Virus record (IMG/VR): IMGVR_UViG_3300032334_001259
Coordinates: 1-64,000 of that record
Reading direction: 5' to 3' (one strand)
Length of the DNA: 64,000 nucleotides
A program made the position numbers and the translations under genes. The notes beneath the pieces are model-generated. The model did no database searches. It saw only the letters and a program-made list of their open reading frames with translations, and was not told where the DNA came from. Below, piece after piece: positions 21,750-33,088 of the stretch. Position 1 is the stretch's first letter; every line of letters begins with the position of its first letter.

Positions 21750-22763
21750 TTAAACAGTTTCTAATTTACCACAGACTTGATCACATTGGATTAATCTACC
21801 GTTTTCATAGCTATCTTTTGTCCATGCACTTTCAACGGTATTAAACCATTTTATGCACGTTTCTAAGTCATATTCATGTAAACTATTATTTTTTACTAAT
21901 GGTTTAATTTGACGATTAATAAATCCATTAAATCCTTGCTTATAAGTTAAAGGATTAAACCCCATATAACAACATGGATAAACTAATCCATTTGCAGCAA
22001 TATAAATTGAATTATGGTTTTTTGTGAAACAATCATGGTATAGACCTACAATATATGGTTTATAAGAGTAAGTTTTGTTTGGATCTTGCTGAAAGCGAAT
22101 TATATCTTCAATATTTGTAAATCCATCATGTTTACCCATAACATGAACTAATTTACCACTGCGATCAAATACTGGACCAGTATTGCGACCATGATCTATT
22201 AAACAAAATTCTTTAAATCCTAATTTTTTAGAAAGTTTTTCTGCTTCTTCAATTTGGTGTAAATTATGCTCAAAACGTATCATCTTCCAAATAGCAACAC
22301 CGCCAGCATCTATGTATGTCTTTGCATTTTGAAGTATTTTATTAAAATTTGTATCTTGACGATACAGTGCGTGAGTATCTTCTAATCCATCTAAACAAAA
22401 TTGAATTTCAGTATTTGAAAATTTACCAAGATCGTGCCAAAAATCTGCATTTCTTGCGCTGCCATTTGTACTTATATCTATTATTAATTTTGAATAACAC
22501 GATTTAAAATAATCTAATATTTGTATAGATTCTAAATTAGCAGTAAAATCACCAAAGTTTCCATTAACTAGTATGCCCCGTTGAAGTTGGTTAATAAATT
22601 GTGACGAGAATGATTTTTTAATTAAATCAAGTGATAAATTTGTTTCTTCATAACCACTATTATATGGATAACCAAATAAGTTTCTTGGACAAAGAGGACA
22701 TCTTGCATTACATAGTGAACTAAATTCCATATGTAAATGTTTAATATTTTGATAAGTTATCAT
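21750..22763 (-). CDS. radical SAM protein with SPASM/twitch-like C-terminus
   Basis: CNARCPLC, STNGS, DG...YR, GLVYPCC; start set at MITYQN. Confidence 0.85.
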   Translation of the reverse strand: MITYQNIKHLHMEFSSLCNARCPLCPRNLFGYPYNSGYEETNLSLDLIKKSFSSQFINQLQRGILVNGNFGDFTANLESIQILDYFKSCYSKLIIDISTNGSARNADFWHDLGKFSNTEIQFCLDGLEDTHALYRQDTNFNKILQNAKTYIDAGGVAIWKMIRFEHNLHQIEEAEKLSKKLGFKEFCLIDHGRNTGPVFDRSGKLVHVMGKHDGFTNIEDIIRFQQDPNKTYSYKPYIVGLYHDCFTKNHNSIYIAANGLVYPCCYMGFNPLTYKQGFNGFINRQIKPLVKNNSLHEYDLETCIKWFNTVESAWTKDSYENGRLIQCDQVCGKLETV

Positions 22764-22767
22764 GTTT

Positions 22768-23565
22768 TTAACAATTTTTAAGTTTTTTAATAGCATTTCC
22801 AACTGTGGTATAAAAATCTTTATTATACAAAAATTCAGTTTTAGATATTTGGCTTAATTTATTATTTGCTTTTTCAATAATTTCATCTCTATACAATAAA
22901 AAATTTTCATTAGATATTGATTTGGGATTTATAATTTCTAAATTTTTAGGAGCAAAAAGCAAGTGTAATCTTTTTTTTCTTGATGCATTAAATGCACTAT
23001 GCAACACACCCGTATTTAATTTATATAATTTTTTAGTATCATTCATCACATAAGCAGCATTACCTTCTATAAAAAAACAATCTGGAATAGTGGTAATAAT
23101 TGGTAAATGATAGGCTACAAAACTTGAATCAATATGAAAATCATACATTGTATGAGGAAACATAGTAGCACATTTGATCATACGAAAATCTATTTTAGTA
23201 ATTGCTTGAATTTCTTCTAATGTTTCTTTTATATATTGAAATTTAGTATCATCTAATATGGAAATAAAACTATCAGTATTTTTTTCATAATCAATATATT
23301 GGGTTTCATTAAAATTTTCTAAACGCTGAACTAATTCTACGACTGTCATCAATTCATCATGAATTACATCATCCAAGTCTCTTACTGGACCTTCTAATTG
23401 TTTTTTTAAAGATAAAGCAGTATCGTGTGTTTTTAAATTTATTTTTTTAGTAGATGTATATTTTTTAACTTCTTCAAGTAGTACAACAATTTGATTATGG
23501 AATTTTGTCCAATTTATATCAGAGTCTTTTAAATCAATAAAATTAGGTAATTCTGGAATGGTCAT
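22768..23565 (-). CDS. AspH-like 2OG-Fe(II) oxygenase domain protein
   Basis: HID...HLPI...LNTGVLHSAFN...RLHL pattern. Confidence 0.65.
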   Translation of the reverse strand: MTIPELPNFIDLKDSDINWTKFHNQIVVLLEEVKKYTSTKKINLKTHDTALSLKKQLEGPVRDLDDVIHDELMTVVELVQRLENFNETQYIDYEKNTDSFISILDDTKFQYIKETLEEIQAITKIDFRMIKCATMFPHTMYDFHIDSSFVAYHLPIITTIPDCFFIEGNAAYVMNDTKKLYKLNTGVLHSAFNASRKKRLHLLFAPKNLEIINPKSISNENFLLYRDEIIEKANNKLSQISKTEFLYNKDFYTTVGNAIKKLKNC

Positions 23566-23639
23566 TGTTTTTTATTTAAGATATTTTTTAAATGATAAAT
23601 TATTATATTATTGGCACATTTAGGCATAAAGGGCAATCA

Positions 23640-25340
23640 ATGAAACTACCAGAAAACGCACAGGCACAATGCGAACAATTACTAAAACAATTTAGACGAC
23701 AAATACCAGATGATGCGGCGTATAGTGACCGACTTGTTGAAGAAATAGAAATCATACTGGGTCTACGCTTTACAGAATACTTCTTACAAATCCGTGAAAT
23801 ATTAGATATGACTAATGACTTACCACACATGACACGTGGTAGTGCAGGCAGTAGTCTTGTTTGTTGGGCATTAGGTATTACAGATGTTGATCCTATAAAA
23901 TGGGATATACCACTTTCACGATTTTTAAATCCGCACCGTGATGATTTACCAGACATTGATATAGACTATCCACATTGGGCACAAACTACAGTTATGGAAC
24001 GTATATTCAAACGTTGGCCTGGTAAAAGTGCAAGAATTAGTAACTATGTTACATTTAAAGAAAAAAGTGCCAAGCGTGAAGCAGCAAGACGACTTGGTGC
24101 AAAAGGAAAATTACCTCGTAACTTCAAATACGATGATCTTGACATTGACATAGGGGAAGCTATTCGTATTGAAAAGAAGTTGCTTGGTAAGAAACGAGCC
24201 ATCAGCAAACACTGTGGTGGCATACTTGTGTTCAAGCATAATCTACCTAAAAGTCTTATAAATGCTGATAATCAAATACTATTAGACAAACATGAAGTAG
24301 AAGACCTTGAACACTTAAAAGTTGATATACTTGCTAATCGTGGATTAAGTCAACTTTATGAAATAGAACCAAATATGGGTTTAGAAGATTATCCTGATTA
24401 TGATGAAGCAACTGTAAAACTTCTTTGTAATGGTGATGTGCTAGGCGTAACACAAGGTGAATCACCAGCAATGCGGCGATTGTTTCGTGCAATACAGCCA
24501 AAGTCACGTAGTGATTGCGTATTTGCTACTGCGCTTATACGTCCTGTTGCAACTACTGGTCGCCAAAAAGCCAGTTTCTTTCACGATTGGACAGAACAGC
24601 GTTTAGAAGAAAGTATTGTTTATGAAGATGATGCTATCAAAAAGATAAGCAAACTTATTGGTTGTGATATCTATGAAGCAGATATGTATCGCCGTGCATT
24701 TGCAAAAAAGAATGAAGAAAAAGTGTATGAGTTTATGCACCGTATGGGAACACACCCAAACAAGACAGAAATTGTAGATGAACTTTATCAACTTGGAAAC
24801 TTTGGACTATGCCGTGCACATGCTGTAAATCTTGGGCGATTGATTTGGGCATTAGCATATCAAAAAGCACATAACCCAAAACCATTTTGGGCAGCATATC
24901 TTAAACACTGTGAAGGCAGTTATCGTCGTTGGGTCTATAAATGTGAAGCCAAACGTGCTGGTTGGGATTTACGTGATCTAGGTTATAATTATAGTTTGTT
25001 AAATGACCCTATATATGAATATAGAAAATATGGATGGTGGGGTGATGCCGATTTTTTACAAGGTTTTTATTGTGCTAATCAATATCTTGACCGTTTTGAA
25101 TTTGCTGGTCTTGTTGCCAATGGTCGTGTATTTAAGGGAGAAGGCGGGAAATACATTACCTTTCTTACACTCGGAATTGACAACGGAAAATATATTGACT
25201 TATTGGTCAAGGGACCAGTAGCATATCATGATTATGATGTTGTATGCGGCGTAGGTAAAGTTAAAACAAGTAATGGCAGTCAGTATATTGAATGTCAAAA
25301 TGTGCGGACATTTAAGCTAGAAAAATTTATTTCTGCTTAA
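23640..25340 (+). CDS. dnaE: compact DNA polymerase III alpha (DnaE) homologue lacking the PHP domain
   Basis: RGSAGSSLV, RFLNP.R..LPDIDID, KHCGG, LKVDIL, Q.ES..M, ALIRP, RAHA, C-terminal OB-like segment; start at MKLPEN. Confidence 0.9.
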   Translation: MKLPENAQAQCEQLLKQFRRQIPDDAAYSDRLVEEIEIILGLRFTEYFLQIREILDMTNDLPHMTRGSAGSSLVCWALGITDVDPIKWDIPLSRFLNPHRDDLPDIDIDYPHWAQTTVMERIFKRWPGKSARISNYVTFKEKSAKREAARRLGAKGKLPRNFKYDDLDIDIGEAIRIEKKLLGKKRAISKHCGGILVFKHNLPKSLINADNQILLDKHEVEDLEHLKVDILANRGLSQLYEIEPNMGLEDYPDYDEATVKLLCNGDVLGVTQGESPAMRRLFRAIQPKSRSDCVFATALIRPVATTGRQKASFFHDWTEQRLEESIVYEDDAIKKISKLIGCDIYEADMYRRAFAKKNEEKVYEFMHRMGTHPNKTEIVDELYQLGNFGLCRAHAVNLGRLIWALAYQKAHNPKPFWAAYLKHCEGSYRRWVYKCEAKRAGWDLRDLGYNYSLLNDPIYEYRKYGWWGDADFLQGFYCANQYLDRFEFAGLVANGRVFKGEGGKYITFLTLGIDNGKYIDLLVKGPVAYHDYDVVCGVGKVKTSNGSQYIECQNVRTFKLEKFISA

Positions 25341-26730
25341 GATTGTTTAACATTTGTCGTAGCGCACTGCTGTTTACATCAGCCTGTATTTTACCAGGTT
25401 GATCTTCTACCACTGCTTCTGTTGATGGCTTAACATTACTGCCACCCTTGATGCTTGCAAAGATACTACTGCTTTGTTTCTTAAATTGTTGATAATCTGG
25501 ATCTTCTGCCAAATCACGAATACGCAAACTATCAATATCAAATTCAAGTTCAATCTTCTGTCCAACACCACTACTACTACGAGTCTTCATAAGTTGTAGT
25601 TGATACTTGCCATGTTCACGCATACTACGACTTGTAAAGATACCAAACAAATTATCCGCAGTGTTAATCTTACTGATACCACCACTGATATGACTGTGGT
25701 CAAATTCAACTTCTTCTACCGATGCACGGTTTAACTGTGAAGCAGTTACAAGAAGTATGTCTAATTCTTTTGCAAAGTTACGAATTTCTTCACTGACATA
25801 CTTGTCTTTAACGAACAGATCGCTTGGACTTACTTTTGCACTTACTGGCATAAGAAGATCAAGGTAATCAATCATAACAAAGTCTACACGACGACCTGTG
25901 CGGATTTGAAGTTCTTTAATATAAGCACGAACGTCATTGATATTGCTTTGTGCTGGCATATATTTGATTTGTAATCTGCCACTTTTCTTACCAAGCATCT
26001 TAACTTTAACTTCAATATCTTCAATACTCTTAAAGATATCTCGTGACGGTGTATTGGTAAGCATACCATCAATACGCATGGCAGTAAGTTCTTCACTTAA
26101 TTCAAGTGTAATGTATACGCCATTAAGACCAGCCAATATCCAATTACATGCAATATTCTGCATGAACAATGATTTACCACTACCAGAACCACCAGCAAAG
26201 ATATTCAACTCACCACGGTTAAATCCACCAAATAACTTCTTATCAAGTGTAGTCCAACCACTACTTGTTTGACCATTATTGTCTTTAATTTTATTCAATC
26301 GTGCAATAGGATCAAGGAAATAATCAGTTCCAAGGTCTTTGGTTAAACTTATTTGTACTGCATCTTTAATAATTTTTTCAACAGGATCAAAGTCACCCTT
26401 CTCAAGCATATCTGCGGCTTTAAGAATTGCACGTTCAAGTTCTTTTTGTTTAGTAAAACCTTCAAATTCTTCCAAGAACCAACTTGTATGGTCGTCGGTC
26501 ATACCAGGTATTGGTTGGAAAGTATTGCTGGTGGCAGCATTAATTTGTTCTACTAATGGCATAATAGTATGCTTGTCACAATGTTCTTTAATGAACCTTG
26601 CAGCACTTTGTAAACTACGGTCAAAGTTGTTTGGATTGAAAATGTTTTGGACACGCACATAGCTTTGTGGATCACTTAACATCATTTCAATGAATAGTTT
26701 TTGAACTTGGGTATCATAAGATTTAGACAT
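25327..26730 (-). CDS. replicative DnaB-family helicase (T4 gp41-like)
   Basis: GGSGSGKS Walker A, ITLELSE, IDYLDL, TASQLNR, MKTR. Confidence 0.93.
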   Translation of the reverse strand: MSKSYDTQVQKLFIEMMLSDPQSYVRVQNIFNPNNFDRSLQSAARFIKEHCDKHTIMPLVEQINAATSNTFQPIPGMTDDHTSWFLEEFEGFTKQKELERAILKAADMLEKGDFDPVEKIIKDAVQISLTKDLGTDYFLDPIARLNKIKDNNGQTSSGWTTLDKKLFGGFNRGELNIFAGGSGSGKSLFMQNIACNWILAGLNGVYITLELSEELTAMRIDGMLTNTPSRDIFKSIEDIEVKVKMLGKKSGRLQIKYMPAQSNINDVRAYIKELQIRTGRRVDFVMIDYLDLLMPVSAKVSPSDLFVKDKYVSEEIRNFAKELDILLVTASQLNRASVEEVEFDHSHISGGISKINTADNLFGIFTSRSMREHGKYQLQLMKTRSSSGVGQKIELEFDIDSLRIRDLAEDPDYQQFKKQSSSIFASIKGGSNVKPSTEAVVEDQPGKIQADVNSSALRQMLNNLKQK

Positions 26731-26811: not shown

Positions 26812-27987
26812 ATGATTACATCTGTTGAAGGCGCAGTTTCGTATAATAATAAATTATCTTTTTTGATTGATTGGGAAATTACCTTAAAATGTAATTTGGA
26901 CTGTGGATATTGTGACAAAGGTATTTACGGTGGACATGAAAACAGTATTCCTCATCCAAATTTAGAAAAATGTTTAAAAACTTTAGATTTTTTATATGAA
27001 TATGTTGACATTTATATGCAAGCAAAGAAAAATTTACAAAGTGCCGTTTTGAATGTATATGGTGGAGAAAGTTTATATCATCCTGACATTGTTACAATTT
27101 TAAAACAAAGCAAAGAAAAACATCAAAAATATAATTGGAATTTGACAATTACTACAACTACAAATTTAATTTTAAGTCAAAAAATATTAAATCAGATATT
27201 AAATTATATAGATGAATTTACGTGTAGCTTTCATTCTGAAAACACAGACAAACAATTAGAAATTTTTAAAGAAAATTTGTTATTTTTAAAAAGCAATAAT
27301 AAAAATTTTAAAGTTGTAATTCTAATGAATCCTAAAAAATGGGAATATTGTTTAGATATGATTTCTTTTTGTCAAGAAAACAATATGAGATTTTTAATAA
27401 GACAGCTTGATCAACCATTAGCCAAAGCTCCCGATAATTATAATTCAGAACTTAAAAAAAAAGAAACTTGGTATTATAATGTTTATCTTGATCGTCCAGA
27501 AAATCATGAACCCAAATACACATATTCTCAAGAACAAATATCTTGGTTTGAAGAGGAATATAATGGTAGAAATAAAAACACTGTAACTTCTATTGACAAA
27601 AATAATAATTTAAATGAACAAGGTAGATGCTGCTGTGGTGGTCGTTTATTATCTACAAATCAAAATTATAAAAATAAAGTAAGTTTTGTTAATAACAATT
27701 TTTTTGATTGGTATTGCTCAGTAAATTATTTTTTTGTTTTTGTGAAACAAGTTACAGAAGAAATATTTGTTAATAAAGATTGTATGATGAATTTTTCTGG
27801 AAATATCGGTCCTATTGGTAATTTAAAAAATTATAATGAACTTTTAAATTTTACAAAAACAAATTTAGAAAATAAAACATTACCTGTAATAAAATGTGCC
27901 AAACAACTTTGCAGATGTGGTTTATGTGCACCAAAAGCAAAAGATAAAGAAATATACTTAAAAATTATGAACAAATATATAAATTAA
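26812..27987 (+). CDS. radical SAM protein
   Basis: CNLDCGYC, YGGE, TTN, SFH, C-terminal Cys cluster; very AT-rich. Confidence 0.85.
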   Translation: MITSVEGAVSYNNKLSFLIDWEITLKCNLDCGYCDKGIYGGHENSIPHPNLEKCLKTLDFLYEYVDIYMQAKKNLQSAVLNVYGGESLYHPDIVTILKQSKEKHQKYNWNLTITTTTNLILSQKILNQILNYIDEFTCSFHSENTDKQLEIFKENLLFLKSNNKNFKVVILMNPKKWEYCLDMISFCQENNMRFLIRQLDQPLAKAPDNYNSELKKKETWYYNVYLDRPENHEPKYTYSQEQISWFEEEYNGRNKNTVTSIDKNNNLNEQGRCCCGGRLLSTNQNYKNKVSFVNNNFFDWYCSVNYFFVFVKQVTEEIFVNKDCMMNFSGNIGPIGNLKNYNELLNFTKTNLENKTLPVIKCAKQLCRCGLCAPKAKDKEIYLKIMNKYIN

Positions 27988-28982
27988 AACCATCTTTTTG
28001 TTTGTAATTTTATTTTTAAGCTAGATTGTTCAACACTACTTAAAATGCTTTTCATAGTAAATGTATGTCCATACTTGGCTACCGCATCTGCAGTATCTTT
28101 AATACCACTTTCCCAATCAGGAAATGCCACACTCCAACCATATCTTAGGGCAGCATCAACCATTGCGTGACCAGCTTTATCACGATCAGGGACAACAATA
28201 ATATCACGGTCAAGCGTTTCAATAACATCAGCTTGTATATCATTAATTTCATTACTACAAATTGCAAGTGCACCAATGGCAACTGCATCAAGTAATCCTT
28301 CAACTACAATACAGAACTTTGCGTTCTTGTGTTGTTTATCATATCCCCATATCATGTTGCTTGGATAGTTTGAAAAGTATTTGATCTTTTTCTTACCATC
28401 TTCAAATAACCGTCCACTGAAACCCATGGGCTTATTGTTCCAAGTAAATGGAACTAACACACGGTTACGCAATGCCGCATCATTAGTCCAATAAAACTCA
28501 TGCAACTTATCGCCAAAACCACGAGTATCAAGATAATTGATAGCATTTTCAAGACTGTTATAATCTGCTTCATTGATATATCCATCATTTAACCAATTTG
28601 TAATTGGACGACCAGGACAAGGATCACGTGGTTCATAGGTAGGTAACTCACGTGGTTCAACTACAACTGGCTTGGTGGTCTCTTGGCTGATAGCAAATAA
28701 TGCAAGACGACCTATAAGGTCTTCACCCATACCAAGCCAGTTCATCCAACGCCGCATTTTATAACTTAAACGACGACCAGGTTGCCAACTACAAGTGTAA
28801 TGACAATTAAAACAATGATAATTGATACCGCCTTCTGGTGTTTGATGAACGCCACCACGACCACGAGTATCGGCTTCATGTCCTAAATGCTGACAGCATG
28901 GTGCGTTAAAGCTAATCCATCCACTTGGAGTAGCTTTCTTTTTCCATGGCAAGTGTGCCAGTAGTTGGTTGGTAATTTCCAT
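27984..28982 (-). CDS. DNA primase (T4 gp61-like)
   Basis: Zn-ribbon (PCC, HCFNC), TOPRIM VEGLLDA and PDRD, KD. Confidence 0.9.
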   Translation of the reverse strand: MEITNQLLAHLPWKKKATPSGWISFNAPCCQHLGHEADTRGRGGVHQTPEGGINYHCFNCHYTCSWQPGRRLSYKMRRWMNWLGMGEDLIGRLALFAISQETTKPVVVEPRELPTYEPRDPCPGRPITNWLNDGYINEADYNSLENAINYLDTRGFGDKLHEFYWTNDAALRNRVLVPFTWNNKPMGFSGRLFEDGKKKIKYFSNYPSNMIWGYDKQHKNAKFCIVVEGLLDAVAIGALAICSNEINDIQADVIETLDRDIIVVPDRDKAGHAMVDAALRYGWSVAFPDWESGIKDTADAVAKYGHTFTMKSILSSVEQSSLKIKLQTKRWF

Positions 28983-28988
28983 TACATT

Positions 28989-29017
28989 AATATAACAGAT
29001 TTATGGTAATCTGTCAA
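28989..29017 (-). promoter_or_regulatory. sigma70 promoter TTGACA-17-TATATT (leaderless) for primase
   Basis: -10 box ends 6 nt before ATG 28982. Confidence 0.7.
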
Positions 29018-29802
29018 GGACGATAATAAATGTAATTCATCTGACCGCTAATTTGGCTTACTTTAAATCTTACAGCACGATATTTGCCTTGGAAATTAAA
29101 GTAATTTGTGCCACTGACATTAGCACAGTTAGCATAACTTATTGTAGTAAAGCTGTTAGCATCAACCACACTCTTTGCGTCCAAACTTGCTTGTAACTGG
29201 ATATTGCCAGTAAAAGCATTTGCATTATATTGTACGGTCTGATAAACAGCACTACCACGAACATAATTTGCTGTCAAGAAGCTACTGCTATAAGCAACAT
29301 TTACATAGTTTGTATCGCCGTCATTACTATAGGTAAAATTGTTAGCAAGATAGCTTGAAGTAAACTGTGGATAAACACCATCGTTTATTCTAGCTTGACC
29401 CTGTGCCTGATAGTTGTCATCGCTGTAAACAATTTCTTGTTCACCACTACCATTTGTAGCAACAATGCTGTAATTATATAAACCAGCGTTTATATTATCA
29501 AGTAAACTGCCTTCAATAAGACAAGTTGCTACACCATCACGTGTATAAACAAGGTCAAGATTGCGTGAAAATACTAATTCTTTTGTAGTGCTATCAATTA
29601 AATTAAATAAAACTGTGCTTTGTAAAAGGCTCGCAGGTTTTTGGTCATTATTTTTAATAACGAACTTAAATCTATTATCTACACCTTTATAGATTTGTAA
29701 TGGTTTGGCGTAAAACAACTGATTCTCCCTGTGTAATGCAAGGTCGCTGTTCTTTACAACAGTTATAATTTGTGGATATAAATAACCTGAAATTTGCTGC
29801 AA
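29014..29802 (-). CDS. hypothetical, probable virion/baseplate protein
   Basis: TTG start, TAAATA upstream, beta-rich, IYKGVDN motif. Confidence 0.6.
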   Translation of the reverse strand: MQQISGYLYPQIITVVKNSDLALHRENQLFYAKPLQIYKGVDNRFKFVIKNNDQKPASLLQSTVLFNLIDSTTKELVFSRNLDLVYTRDGVATCLIEGSLLDNINAGLYNYSIVATNGSGEQEIVYSDDNYQAQGQARINDGVYPQFTSSYLANNFTYSNDGDTNYVNVAYSSSFLTANYVRGSAVYQTVQYNANAFTGNIQLQASLDAKSVVDANSFTTISYANCANVSGTNYFNFQGKYRAVRFKVSQISGQMNYIYYRP

Positions 29803-29828
29803 CTAATGGACCCTTTTTAATATTTATT

Positions 29829-30203
29829 ATGAGTTTTTCACTGGAACAAATGCTTGAACAATATCCCTTCTTAAGTTACATAAAATATCCCACTGCGGAC
29901 TTTATTGGAATTATACAAAATTTTGATGGCGACATTGTTTCCATGTATGCCTTTAATAAATTAAAAACCGAAGAAGATAAACGTGGTTTTTTAGAAGCAG
30001 CAGAAATATGGTGGTGGGAAAGTAATCGGTTGATACCAATCAATATTTTTTTAAAGCATGGTTGGGACAAATATCGTTATAGTACAGTAACACTTACAAC
30101 AAAAGATATAAGAGAGCAGTGTGGTCACATAGTAAGCATTGCAAAACTTGCAGAACGTAGAACAAAACGCAGAGTTGTTCAGTTAGTTAAACGACTCGGT
30201 TAA
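29829..30203 (+). CDS. conserved phage hypothetical protein
   Basis: YPFLS, WWWESNRLIPINIFL; start set at MSFSLE. Confidence 0.65.
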   Translation: MSFSLEQMLEQYPFLSYIKYPTADFIGIIQNFDGDIVSMYAFNKLKTEEDKRGFLEAAEIWWWESNRLIPINIFLKHGWDKYRYSTVTLTTKDIREQCGHIVSIAKLAERRTKRRVVQLVKRLG

Positions 30204-30743
30204 CAAATTCATATGAACCATAACTAATTGTGCATAGCCATAAGCATGCGCTTTCTTAAAATAATAACCTTCATTTGGTTTAATCCAAATCTCATCAGCT
30301 ATTTCTCGCCATCGTTTTCCGATAAGGTGTCGTTTGGATGGACGAATGATTGCCAATACCATAGCCAACATATCCATTGAAGTAGGATGATGTTGTTGTA
30401 AGACATCAAAATGATTTGATAAATGAATAAGTTTGGCAACAAAATCCCTTTCTTTTAATAGTTCCCACTGTGGTTCACGTTTACAGAGTTCGTCAAGATG
30501 CTCGTTACTGCAAACTGAATTATAAACGTGAACATTTAGTAGGTCTAACTTCATATAACCTAATTCTTCTGCCGCATCATAATCAACATTGCTTAAACCA
30601 GTAAGTGGGTTTTGGGGTATGGGATTGACATAGACTCCAGTGTTGTGCTTGACAACGTTACCGTCACGGCGTATAGACGCAGGCACGTGCTTGATAAGTT
30701 TCAAGATATCCTCACGGCTTCCGAAATCTATGTCAATATCCAT
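30183..30743 (-). CDS. mini-DnaE: stand-alone palm/fingers fragment of a C-family polymerase
   Basis: MDIDIDF, KHNTGVYV, GYMKLDLL, LAIIRP and FKKAHAYGYA are colinear with DnaE motifs. Confidence 0.8.
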   Translation of the reverse strand: MDIDIDFGSREDILKLIKHVPASIRRDGNVVKHNTGVYVNPIPQNPLTGLSNVDYDAAEELGYMKLDLLNVHVYNSVCSNEHLDELCKREPQWELLKERDFVAKLIHLSNHFDVLQQHHPTSMDMLAMVLAIIRPSKRHLIGKRWREIADEIWIKPNEGYYFKKAHAYGYAQLVMVHMNLLTESFN

Positions 30744-30995
30744 TTATGCCCATCTCATTAAAAATAAACTACGTTCTTCATCATTAATAAACCCTAACAT
30801 CGTACCGTATTGTGACCACTTTGTCAAGGAAAAATTGCACCATGCCTTAATATCTTCTTCATTCTTTACCCAGAATGATGGATCAGCGATAATAAGAAAA
30901 CTTTTGTTTATTATCAAATCAAGCGCATAGACATTATCAGATAAGTCACGAATATCTTTCAATGATGCGGTACCAACTACAAATCGTGCCGCCAT
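30744..30995 (-). CDS. hypothetical protein
   Basis: 83-aa ORF, coupled to neighbours. Confidence 0.6.
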   Translation of the reverse strand: MAARFVVGTASLKDIRDLSDNVYALDLIINKSFLIIADPSFWVKNEEDIKAWCNFSLTKWSQYGTMLGFINDEERSLFLMRWA

Positions 30996-31729
30996 TAGCA
31001 GCCTGCTTTTTCTAATATCTGCCTTGCAAGTTCTGCTTCTGCAGCGTGTATTTTTAATTTACGTTCCCAAAATGGTGGGTCAATCCATGGCAAAGCAAGA
31101 GTAACTTGTTCTTCGTTTAATTCACCAAGTTTTTCCATGCCAGCATCACAGCAATAAATTACCCAAGGACTAATGCGACCATGCACGATATGATTTATTA
31201 AACGACTGGTACTAATCTTCTTAAAATAATCACTAAACTCTATGGTGCCATCTTTGGTTTCTTCTGCCCAACGTTGCATTGTTTCAATACTACGTTCCAT
31301 TGCTTCATCATATTTTTCTGTTCTGACATATTCCCAAAGATATGATTCATAAATTTTATCACGTGTCCAACTATCAAGTTTGTATTTGCTTGTAAGCACG
31401 TAATCTATAAATTTATTAACATTAATTGCATCAATGGCATGGCAATGACGACCAAACTTTACAAAACCTTGATACAATGAACTGCTACAAAAATCCTCAT
31501 ATGTTTTAAGTTTAGCACTGCCTTGGGTTAATTCATAAAACCGCATCCAAGCAATATAACCAATACGCACACCCTTTTCATTCTTTTGGTTTTCACGTCT
31601 TTTTGGTTCACATTGGTGAACAACAAGACTGCTCTCACGAGTGAAAGCAAGTCCACAATGCTTGCAGACATGCTCACCAGGTTTTACCTCTTTAGCGGCT
31701 TCACGGGCAATCTTACGTAATTCGTTCAT
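30995..31729 (-). CDS. zinc-finger-containing conserved phage protein
   Basis: CKHC...H.C zinc-finger-like motif. Confidence 0.6.
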   Translation of the reverse strand: MNELRKIAREAAKEVKPGEHVCKHCGLAFTRESSLVVHQCEPKRRENQKNEKGVRIGYIAWMRFYELTQGSAKLKTYEDFCSSSLYQGFVKFGRHCHAIDAINVNKFIDYVLTSKYKLDSWTRDKIYESYLWEYVRTEKYDEAMERSIETMQRWAEETKDGTIEFSDYFKKISTSRLINHIVHGRISPWVIYCCDAGMEKLGELNEEQVTLALPWIDPPFWERKLKIHAAEAELARQILEKAGC

Positions 31730-32252
31730 TTAATAATGATTTAGCTTCTTCTGTAATATAATACTTAAATCTGCTGTTGTCAAATCCTAATATCACATCT
31801 TTATGTAGTGGCAATTCATGAACATTGTATGGTTCTGTGTGAATAATTTCATTATAATATTGTGGAAAATTACCAAAATACACTTTTGGTTTTGCAATAT
31901 GTGTTATAGATTCATTAATAAATTTATGATGCAAGTGACCATACTCGCCAAGGTGATTGTGTGTTAATACAAAATCATGTTGACTGCAATGATACTGTAA
32001 AAATTTTTGCGCATCTTCACCATCAAAACCTAATTCATTATTTTTTACAAATTTCCAATCATCAGTAAAACCACCAAATTGTGTTTCAATTCCATATTTG
32101 TTCCAGAAATTTTTCATTTCAATAGCACGTGGATCATTAGAATTGTATGTAAGATAAACAATCTTCCAATTAAAATGCTGATACTTTCTTATAAATCCCC
32201 AAGCAAATATTACACAATCATCAGGGTGAGCAACTAAACAAACTGCTTTCAT
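31713..32252 (-). CDS. PIG-L/LmbE-family N-deacetylase-like protein
   Basis: VAHPDD and THN..GEYGH.HH motifs. Confidence 0.8.
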   Translation of the reverse strand: MKAVCLVAHPDDCVIFAWGFIRKYQHFNWKIVYLTYNSNDPRAIEMKNFWNKYGIETQFGGFTDDWKFVKNNELGFDGEDAQKFLQYHCSQHDFVLTHNHLGEYGHLHHKFINESITHIAKPKVYFGNFPQYYNEIIHTEPYNVHELPLHKDVILGFDNSRFKYYITEEAKSLLNERIT

Positions 32253-33088
32253 ATACGGTCCTTTACAAACTCATCCCATGCATTACGTTGGGCAGTATCA
32301 AGAAGTTTATAAGCACGAGGATGCACACTTGCAGTGAGTGCTTTGTAATCATTTTGCAATTTAACAAACCAGTTATAAAATGTATCTACTTCCCAATCCG
32401 CAAGATTGTAAATACCAATTTTTTGTTTGCCACTATAAAGATCATCAAATAAGTTATTCTTGCTTATCCAAGCACTGTAACATAAAAATTCAGTTATACC
32501 ATGTGTGTCAGGATTTGCTTTGCTTGGAAACTGACAATTACTTTCAAACCATTCTATAAAGTTTGGTTCACTCATAACCATATCACGCATGGCGTGTGTA
32601 TAAGCAAGAAAAGGAACACCAGCAGGACTGATCCACTTAAAATCTGTAATGCTATATTTTTGTTTTAGAAACTCTAAACCAGACTGCCAATGTGGACTAT
32701 TGCAGTCCCAACTTTCACAATGTGCACGATTGTATTGGTCAAATATTTCTTCTATATCAAGTGGACGAATAAACCATGTCTTGGCATCAAGTATCATGCA
32801 CCAATTACTTTCGGCATGTGCAGTGCCAAGTATCTTGCATACTTGTTGTGTATACCAACCTGACAGATGAGGTGATGGATAATAACCAAACTCGTTGCGG
32901 TGAAATATACGGACTTTATAGCCAAGTTCACCATACCAACTGATATCTATATCATCATGAGTTAGCGTTTCATCATTTAATATAACATATATATTTTGTA
33001 TTTCATCATCAAAGTAATAAGACATACTGTATGCTTGATGTTCAAGCAAATGCAATTCATCACGATAAACGACAGTTAGCAAGTCCAT
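32249..33088 (-). CDS. GT-A-like putative glycosyltransferase (DUF6492-like)
   Basis: GWYTQQVCK, LDAK, TEF..Y. Confidence 0.55.
   Translation of the reverse strand: MDLLTVVYRDELHLLEHQAYSMSYYFDDEIQNIYVILNDETLTHDDIDISWYGELGYKVRIFHRNEFGYYPSPHLSGWYTQQVCKILGTAHAESNWCMILDAKTWFIRPLDIEEIFDQYNRAHCESWDCNSPHWQSGLEFLKQKYSITDFKWISPAGVPFLAYTHAMRDMVMSEPNFIEWFESNCQFPSKANPDTHGITEFLCYSAWISKNNLFDDLYSGKQKIGIYNLADWEVDTFYNWFVKLQNDYKALTASVHPRAYKLLDTAQRNAWDEFVKDRI

What the first reader, a model, noticed from the sequence alone, without database searches (positions are those of the whole stretch)
30183..30743. 186-aa mini-DnaE retaining all three catalytic aspartates
Seen: DIDID (equivalent to the E. coli alpha D401/D403 motif), KHNTGV, KLDLL (K553/D555 motif), AIIRP and FKKAHA are in DnaE order. 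The protein starts at the catalytic motif, so PHP, the upstream RGS nucleotide-binding motif, most of the thumb and fingers, and the OB fold are missing. It is intact, translationally coupled and sits among replication genes. Known: DnaE is normally about 1000-1200 aa. Inference: this is either one half of a split, drastically reduced C-family polymerase with an RGS-bearing partner elsewhere in the genome, or a palm repurposed as a non-replicative nucleotidyltransferase.
Basis: partly seen in the sequence, partly recalled or inferred. Interest (0 to 1): 0.75.

Follow-up and report, generated by a model that had tools for sequence, protein, structure and literature searches.

The report
Half of a split mini DNA polymerase
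This 186-residue gene in an uncultured 338-kb jumbo phage encodes the metal-binding half of a tiny two-piece relative of the bacterial replicative DNA polymerase; its nucleotide-binding partner lies about 227 kb away, and the arrangement was described by comparative genomics in 2021 but never tested at the bench.

Summary
An intact 186-aa ORF at 30183..30743 (-) starts at the DxDxD motif and carries the DnaE motifs in DnaE order.

- The RGS-bearing partner is a 171-aa ORF elsewhere in the same genome (G000:C1:257441-257956, -). It ends just before the position of the catalytic Asp pair.
- Both halves co-occur, always at separate loci, in PA5oct, 121Q, Atu_ph07, Phosso and about 96 phage records.
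- Three natural fused forms (375-376 aa) exist in metagenomes.
- A complex prediction scores 0.91 against 0.01 for the best control.
- The catalytic residues are almost invariant in 264 homologues, and dN/dS is about 0.13.

It lacks the PHP domain, the thumb, about half of the fingers, the clamp-binding domain and the OB domain.

The split was published by Iyer et al. 2021 (PMC7824862) for 'group 2.2' jumbo phages, which also carry PolB, as this genome does. The finding is therefore already known; its biochemistry is untested.

One thing is unusual here: the same window also holds an unsplit, PHP-less 582-aa DnaE (23592..25340, +), which six sampled complete relatives lack.

The parts
30183..30743 (-). 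C-terminal (Mg2+-binding palm plus reduced fingers) subunit of a split minimal PolIII-alpha-like polymerase, 186 aa, phrog_11778
   Evidence: ORF and motifs. PHROG match E=1e-60. Fold matches to C-family polymerases only. Invariant D2/D4/K65/D67/R134/H166. dN/dS about 0.13.
30744..30995 (-). Upstream 83-aa ORF of unknown function. Its TAA stop directly abuts the ATG of the C-half, in the same frame.
   Evidence: No Pfam or PHROG hit. It has no RGS motif, so it is not the missing half.
29772..30203 (+). Convergent 143-aa ORF (phrog_11637, unknown function) overlapping the 3' end of the C-half gene by 21 nt. A convergent ORF overlapping the C-half gene's 3' end by 4-17 nt is annotated at the same position in PA5oct, 121Q, Atu_ph07 and Phosso.
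   Evidence: Annotated neighbours.
29014..29802 (-). Virion structural protein homologue (262 aa), a conserved neighbour
   Evidence: phrog_14467 E=3e-10. Same position in relatives.
27984..28982 (-). DNA primase (332 aa), a conserved neighbour
   Evidence: phrog_47 E=8e-25. Synteny.
25327..26730 (-). DnaB-like replicative helicase (467 aa)
   Evidence: phrog_19 E=9e-67; PF03796.
23592..25340 (+). Separate, unsplit, PHP-less DnaE-like polymerase (582 aa) with RGS, DIDID, KVDIL and IRP motifs on one chain. It is not part of the split enzyme but is a second C-family polymerase in the same genome.
   Evidence: PF07733 E=1e-40 plus PF17657 E=9e-15, with no PHP match. phrog_405 E=1.5e-63.

Best explanation
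The ORF encodes the C-terminal subunit of a two-piece, minimal C-family (PolIII alpha / DnaE-like) nucleotidyl-transferase.

What each piece supplies:
- This subunit carries the three catalytic aspartates (D2, D4, D67), the K-x-D strand, the KH..G strand and a shortened fingers module (R134-P135, K164, H166).
- The other half of the palm, with the GRGS triphosphate-binding loop, is a separate 171-aa protein encoded about 227 kb away in the same 338-kb phage genome (G000:C1:257441-257956, -).

How they are proposed to work:
- The two chains are proposed to assemble non-covalently into one Pol-beta-like palm. There is no intein. The break falls in the loop that in E. coli links the RGS helix to the DxD strand.
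- Inferred, not shown: the heterodimer is a templated, low-processivity DNA polymerase. It has no thumb, clamp-binding domain, OB fold or PHP domain.
- It would work beside the phage's T4-type family-B replicase. The most likely roles are short-patch synthesis at the fork (for example primer extension next to the primase-helicase) or repair.

Shown: the homology, the partner, their co-occurrence, the natural fusions, and purifying selection. The heterodimer itself is only predicted.
Inferred: catalysis, substrate and biological role.
For: - Partner: the genome holds a 171-aa ORF matching PF07733 positions 42-94 right up to its last residue. It belongs to phrog_11127 at E=3e-38.
- Partner family: it has at least 7963 members of about 160-187 aa. 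All aligned members end at the EF[MLI][RK] tail, and GVGRGSSVASFVLY is invariant.
- Co-occurrence: the C-half is in 96 phage records and the N-half in about the same set of genera, always at separate loci. Six of six complete relatives checked, plus the own genome, have both.
- Natural fusions: P0288, P0391 and P0392 (375-376 aa, 78-81% identical to each other) join an N-half and a C-half through a short linker of about 11 residues.
- Complex prediction: ipSAE 0.91, against 0.01 for the best of 3 controls. That mark was reached by 58 of 80 solved complexes and 2 of 110 mismatched pairs. The interface includes C-half residues 1-8 and N-half residues 132-145 and 168-171.
- Selection: D2 and D4 are present in 262 of 264 homologues, K65 and D67 in 264 of 264, and R134 in 262 of 264, down to 32% identity. 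Median dN/dS is 0.13 over 123 pairs.
- Context: the genome also has a family-B polymerase. The order C-half / convergent ORF / structural protein / primase is conserved, with the DnaB-type helicase seen directly after the primase in PA5oct and 121Q.
- Literature: Iyer et al. 2021 describe exactly this split in group 2.2 jumbo phages.
Against: - No biochemical or genetic test of any member was found.
- The complex score is a model's confidence. It can be helped by memory of intact DnaE structures.
- Without a thumb and with truncated fingers, duplex binding may be too weak for templated synthesis.
- Sequence-only comparison of the C-half with DnaE is weak.
- No transcription evidence was obtained. 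The candidate RNA runs are probably DNA and hold relatives only.
- This genome already has PolB and an unsplit DnaE, so a third replicative activity is not obviously needed.
Confidence: 0.8

Rival explanations
1. The two halves do assemble, but the enzyme is not a templated DNA polymerase. It would be a non-replicative nucleotidyl-transferase built on the C-family palm, for example a terminal transferase, a tailing enzyme or a small-nucleotide synthase.
Confidence: 0.13
2. The 186-aa protein works alone, without the 171-aa protein, as a stand-alone metal-binding module or a regulator.
For: The genes are far apart and no co-regulation has been shown. The model of the C-half alone folds with mean pLDDT 85.6.
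Against: Alone it lacks the GRGS triphosphate-binding loop and about half of the palm. The partner co-occurs in every complete genome checked and is fused to it in three natural proteins. In the complex model the first eight residues, including the DxDxD motif, lie in the interface.
Confidence: 0.04
3. It is a decaying fragment of a once full-length dnaE, or the halves are joined covalently by an intein, by read-through or by recoding.
For: The upstream ORF is in the same frame, separated by a single TAA. Cyanobacterial DnaE is known to be split and re-joined by a split intein (established knowledge).
Against: Median dN/dS is 0.13 and the catalytic residues are near-invariant across 264 homologues. 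Thousands of homologues have the same length. The N-half ends at a conserved EF[MLI][RK] tail and the C-half starts 1-11 residues before DxDxD, which leaves no room for intein halves. The upstream 83-aa ORF has no DnaE similarity, and in relatives the upstream gene is out of frame or overlapping.
Confidence: 0.03

Closest known systems
Split minimal DNA polymerase III alpha of 'group 2.2' jumbo phages (Iyer, Anantharaman, Krishnan, Burroughs, Aravind 2021, Viruses 13:63, PMC7824862); PHROG families phrog_11778 (C-half) and phrog_11127 (N-half)
   Same: Same two families, with full-length HMM matches at E=1e-60 and 3e-38. Same split point, and the genes are likewise at distant loci. PolB is present in the same genome. 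The C-half has the same neighbours as in PA5oct, 121Q, Atu_ph07 and Phosso.
   Different: It is only 38-49% identical to the cultured-phage proteins. This lineage additionally carries an unsplit 582-aa DnaE, whereas the paper says such phages contain no other PolIII domains.
Bacterial C-family replicases: DnaE (E. coli, Taq, M. tuberculosis DnaE1) and PolC
   Different: About 357 residues in two chains, against 1000-1450 in one. There is no PHP domain, no thumb (about 79 residues missing between D403 and H511), no 89-residue fingers insert, nothing beyond about E. coli residue 780, no clamp-binding or OB domain, and no tau-binding region. Pfam PF07733 does not detect the C-half.
Intein-split DnaE of cyanobacteria (dnaE-n / dnaE-c joined by protein trans-splicing; established knowledge, cf. 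PMC2677866 found)
   Same: A C-family polymerase encoded by two distant genes.
   Different: There is no intein sequence at either junction here. The split site is different, lying before the DxD motif in the palm. Reassembly must be non-covalent.
Unsplit PHP-less phage DnaE-like polymerases (phrog_405), including the 582-aa protein at 23592..25340 in this window
   Same: Phage-encoded C-family polymerases lacking PHP, with the same catalytic motifs.
   Different: They are single chains that keep the thumb and full fingers (PF17657). Their similarity to the split halves is only marginal: BLASTP E=8e-4 and 0.012. They are a separate lineage, and LR756508.1 has the unsplit form without a C-half.

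Membership tests
Split minimal PolIII alpha of jumbo phages (phrog_11778 / phrog_11127; Iyer et al. 2021) | Full-length match of the C-half to the family profile | tested here: met
   phrog_11778 E=1e-60, residues 1-183 on profile positions 7-193 of 197.
Split minimal PolIII alpha of jumbo phages (phrog_11778 / phrog_11127; Iyer et al. 2021) | A separate gene for the N-terminal NTP-binding half at a distant locus of the same genome | tested here: met
   A 171-aa ORF at G000:C1:257441-257956 (-). phrog_11127 E=3e-38; PF07733 positions 42-94.
Split minimal PolIII alpha of jumbo phages (phrog_11778 / phrog_11127; Iyer et al. 2021) | Accompanied by a family-B DNA polymerase in a jumbo phage genome | tested here: met
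   PF00136 match in an 887-aa frame at about 222.8-224.1 kb of the 338,435-bp record.
Split minimal PolIII alpha of jumbo phages (phrog_11778 / phrog_11127; Iyer et al. 2021) | No other PolIII alpha domains in the genome (as stated in the paper) | tested here: not met
   An unsplit 582-aa DnaE with palm and fingers lies at window 23592..25340. This is an addition in this lineage and does not conflict with membership of the two halves.
C-family DNA polymerase catalytic core (DnaE / PolC) | Pol-beta-like palm with three catalytic Asp (E. coli D401, D403, D555) | tested here: met
   D2, D4 and D67 by motif order, by fold alignment to E. coli 403-780 and by near-invariance.
C-family DNA polymerase catalytic core (DnaE / PolC) | GRGS triphosphate-binding loop on the same polypeptide | tested here: not met
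   Absent from the 186-aa protein. It is present in the 171-aa partner as R140-G141-S142.
C-family DNA polymerase catalytic core (DnaE / PolC) | Match to Pfam PF07733 above the gathering score | tested here: not met
   No Pfam hit for the C-half at E up to 10. The N-half passes at 34.2 bits against a cut-off of 23.9.
C-family DNA polymerase catalytic core (DnaE / PolC) | PHP domain, thumb, full fingers, clamp-binding and OB domains | tested here: not met
   The protein spans only the equivalent of E. coli 401-780, with about 79 and about 89 residues deleted. Neither half gives a PF02811 or PF17657 hit.
C-family DNA polymerase catalytic core (DnaE / PolC) | Template-directed DNA polymerase activity | not testable with these tools
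Intein-split DnaE (protein trans-splicing) | N-intein after the N-extein and C-intein before the C-extein | tested here: not met
   The N-half stops at the conserved EF[MLI][RK] tail. The C-half begins 1-11 residues before DxDxD. There is no extra sequence at either junction.

The most novel reading that the evidence does not exclude
The heterodimer might be a dedicated primer-extension or hand-off polymerase rather than a redundant replicase. It would be physically tied to the primase-helicase whose genes it neighbours, analogous to B. subtilis DnaE working ahead of PolC.

This lineage would then run three polymerases with divided labour: PolB, an unsplit PHP-less DnaE, and the split mini enzyme.

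Alternatively, the pair is a surviving model of the ancestral minimal PolIII module, as Iyer et al. speculate. As a roughly 40-kDa two-chain core it would be the smallest C-family polymerase.
Probability: 0.15. Interest if true: 0.6.

Novelty: already known. Interest (0 to 1): 0.3.

Why it matters
If the two small proteins really rebuild an active C-family polymerase, they define its minimal catalytic core: a palm plus a stub of fingers, about 357 residues, with no thumb.

That would be useful for understanding how PolIII alpha works and evolved, and as a compact enzyme scaffold.

It would also show that many jumbo phages, thousands of metagenomic relatives included, run a bacterial-type and an archaeo-eukaryotic-type polymerase side by side.

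The idea itself is published. What remains open is entirely experimental. This window adds a lineage that also carries an unsplit DnaE, plus natural fused forms that could be expressed as a single chain.

Tried and rejected
- Sequence-only links from the C-half to DnaE were weak or absent. Pfam gave nothing. phmmer and a profile search against PDB found no DnaE. hhalign against the 582-aa DnaE gave 31% probability and aligned to a secondary DLDID rather than the catalytic one. Structure comparison was needed.
- An alignment made to model the fused form (A4) put the N-halves onto the C-part and was discarded. A5 was used instead. Its only flaw is a misplaced 15-residue tail of the N-halves.
It was repeated without them.
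- Transcription evidence failed. The four candidate 'RNA' runs are probably DNA and hold only 90-95% similar relatives in short contigs.
- An intein or read-through explanation was considered and rejected.
- Whether the fused forms are ancestral or secondary was left open, because no reliable outgroup roots the family.
- The literature searches found no experimental work on either half.

Full report
OBSERVATION

The window is the first 64 kb of a 338,435-bp virus record with direct terminal repeats. At 30183..30743 on the minus strand there is an intact 186-codon ORF.
- It begins M-D-I-D-I-D-F.
- Its ATG (30741-30743) directly abuts the TAA stop (30744-30746) of an upstream 83-aa ORF, so no longer N-terminus is possible.
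- A convergent 143-aa ORF overlaps its 3' end by 21 nt.

I read E. coli K-12 dnaE from NC_000913.3 and located the motifs in both proteins.

| C-half | E. coli DnaE |
|---|---|
| D2/D4/D6 | D401/D403/D405 |
| K32-H33..G36 | K510-H511..G514 |
| K65/D67 | K553/D555 |
| R134-P135 | R639-P640 |
| K164/H166 | K758/H760 |

The order is the DnaE order. The spacings show two deletions: about 79 residues between D403 and H511 (the thumb), and about 89 residues between R639 and K758 (part of the fingers).

IS IT REALLY DnaE-LIKE?

Sequence-only methods are nearly blind to it.
- Pfam gives no hit, and PDB searches with the sequence or a profile give none.
- A weak PHROG hit links residues 146-180 to the long phage DnaE family phrog_405.
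- hhalign against the window's own 582-aa DnaE is marginal.

The family is solid, however.
- phrog_11778 ('DNA polymerase') matches at E=1e-60 over the full length.
- There are 3295 homologues of about 186-200 aa.
- An exhaustive scan finds 415 cluster representatives.

The structure settles the question.
- An AlphaFold2 model (mean pLDDT 85.6) has only C-family polymerases as strong PDB matches. Foldseek's top 17 are all C-family.
- The model aligns to E. coli residues 403-780, Taq 462-837 and PolC 972-1295.

THE PARTNER

A PF07733 search of the whole genome found two further DnaE-like genes.

The first is a 171-aa ORF at G000:C1:257441-257956 (-), about 227 kb from the finding (L002:1513-2028).
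- It matches PF07733 positions 42-94 right up to its last residue.
- It belongs to phrog_11127 at E=3e-38.
- Its family has at least 7963 members of about 160-187 aa. All aligned members end at a conserved EF[MLI][RK] tail, with GVGRGSSVASFVLY invariant.
- R140-G141-S142 correspond to E. coli R362-G363-S364.

So the N-half stops, and the C-half starts, in the loop that in E. coli links the RGS helix to the DxD strand.

There is no room for intein halves. Across 71 viral contigs the C-half starts 1-11 residues before DxDxD.

DO THE HALVES BELONG TOGETHER?

(i) Co-occurrence.
- tblastn finds the C-half in 96 phage records, and the N-half in essentially the same genera and numbers.
- The loci are always separate: PA5oct 143,956 vs 187,627; 121Q 13,327 vs 44,374; Atu_ph07 58,322 vs 240,853; Phosso 321,343 vs 97,450.
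- Atu_ph07, Phosso, PA5oct, 121Q and two complete IMG/VR genomes of 352 and 374 kb each have the N-half as their only PF07733 match.

(ii) Natural fusions.
- The exhaustive scan turned up a 375-aa protein, P0288. It has an N-half, a linker of about 11 residues and a C-half in one frame.
- A follow-up search found two more, P0391 and P0392, at 78-81% identity from other samples.

(iii) Complex prediction.
- The score is 0.91 in three runs against 0.01 for the best of three controls.
- That mark was reached by 58 of 80 solved complexes and 2 of 110 mismatched pairs.
- The interface includes C-half residues 1-8 and N-half residues 132-145 and 168-171.
- This supports binding but does not show it, and memory of intact DnaE structures may help the score.

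(iv) Fold of the fused form.
- It scores 21.0 on M. tuberculosis DnaE1, 20.3 on PolC and about 15 on E. coli alpha.
- The best non-C-family fold, a minimal nucleotidyl-transferase, scores 4.3.

SELECTION

In 264 distinct homologues (32-92% identical to the window's protein), conservation is as follows.

| Residue | Conserved in |
|---|---|
| D2 | 262 |
| D4 | 262 |
| K65 | 264 |
| D67 | 264 |
| R134 | 262 |
| H166 | 256 |

Nei-Gojobori dN/dS among 22 close relatives of equal length has a median of 0.13, range 0.09-0.25, over 123 pairs with dS 0.05-1.5. This is a gene under purifying selection, not a decaying fragment.

CONTEXT

- Within 7 kb lie a DNA primase (27984..28982), a DnaB-like helicase (25327..26730), a virion structural protein homologue and a radical-SAM gene.
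- The order C-half / convergent small ORF / structural protein / primase recurs in PA5oct, 121Q, Atu_ph07 and Phosso; in PA5oct and 121Q a DnaB-type helicase follows the primase directly.
- The genome also encodes a family-B polymerase in an 887-aa frame.

WHAT IS KNOWN

Iyer et al. 2021 (Viruses 13:63, PMC7824862) described this for their 'group 2.2' jumbo phages, which infect gamma- and alpha-proteobacteria and include Atu_ph07.
[quoted passage not shown] - It accompanies the family-B polymerase and possibly cooperates with it in synthesising one strand or in repair.

RefSeq and several GenBank records already call both halves 'DNA polymerase' or 'DNA polymerase III alpha'. I found no experimental study of either half. 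The finding is therefore a correct rediscovery of a published, computationally defined system.

MECHANISM, WITH ITS STATUS

Supported by the analyses here (all computational):
- homology to the C-family core;
- the trans-encoded RGS partner;
- co-occurrence;
- natural fusion;
- purifying selection on the catalytic residues;
- absence of inteins.

Predicted:
- a non-covalent heterodimer that rebuilds one palm.

Inferred:
- that it polymerises DNA on a template;
- that the lack of a thumb, clamp-binding domain, OB fold and PHP domain makes it distributive and non-proofreading;
- that it serves short-patch synthesis near the primase-helicase, or repair, beside PolB.

The main rival is that the rebuilt palm does non-templated transfer. 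Nothing here excludes it. The conserved fingers residues and the best superposition on a DNA- and dNTP-bound complex argue against it.

WHAT IS UNUSUAL HERE

The window also carries an unsplit, PHP-less 582-aa DnaE (23592..25340, +), with PF07733 at 1e-40 and the fingers domain PF17657.
- Relatives with the split enzyme lack it: four cultured phages and two complete IMG/VR genomes.
- A near copy of this genome has it. So does a 183-kb relative, which has a 572-aa version about 5 kb from its C-half gene.
- The best match in cultured or deposited phages is an uncultured 484-kb phage, LR756508.1 (37% identity). That phage has no C-half.
- This lineage thus combines PolB, a split mini PolIII alpha and an unsplit DnaE. 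That departs from the statement in Iyer et al. that such phages hold no other PolIII domains.

WHAT LED NOWHERE

- The candidate RNA runs are probably DNA and contain only relatives.
- One alignment (A4) was misaligned and dropped.
- The direction of the split or fusion could not be decided without an outgroup.

VERDICT

- The system is already known from comparative genomics but is biochemically untested.
- Interest is modest.

Noticed in passing
window 23592..25340 (+): An unsplit, PHP-less 582-aa DnaE-like polymerase (palm, thumb and fingers on one chain). It sits beside the DnaB gene in the same genome as the split mini enzyme and PolB. It is absent from PA5oct, 121Q, Atu_ph07, Phosso and two complete IMG/VR relatives. 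It is present in a 183-kb relative and, without a detected split-enzyme half, in LR756508.1.
   Followed up: partly
L007:1066-2193 (+) and proteins P0288, P0391, P0392: Three natural single-chain fusions (375-376 aa) of the N-half and the C-half, joined by a short linker of about 11 residues. They come from short metagenomic contigs. The nearest relatives of their C-part are stand-alone proteins of about 207 aa. Whether the fusion is ancestral or secondary is open.
   Followed up: partly
window 29772..30203 (+): A convergent ORF of unknown function (phrog_11637) overlaps the 3' end of the C-half gene by 21 nt. A convergent ORF overlapping the C-half gene's 3' end by 4-17 nt is annotated at the same position in PA5oct, 121Q, Atu_ph07 and Phosso.
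   Followed up: partly
window 30744..30995 (-): An 83-aa ORF with no family match lies in the same frame as the C-half, separated from it only by one TAA. In relatives the upstream gene is out of frame or overlapping, so this looks coincidental.
   Followed up: partly
window 21750..22802 (-) and 26812..27987 (+): Two ORFs with Cys-rich motifs lie among the replication genes. The second matches Pfam Radical_SAM and sits between primase and DnaB, where PA5oct and 121Q have nothing. The first was judged radical-SAM-like from its CxxxCxxC motif only.
   Followed up: no
window 31713..32252 (-) and 32249..33088 (-): A PIG-L/LmbE-type deacetylase homologue (PF02585) and a DUF6492 protein lie just upstream in the same gene string. 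Their role is unknown.
   Followed up: no
L002 (G000:C1:255929-259099): From their sequences alone, the neighbours of the N-half gene include a GroES-like 129-aa ORF and a MazG-like 87-aa ORF. Neither was searched.
   Followed up: no
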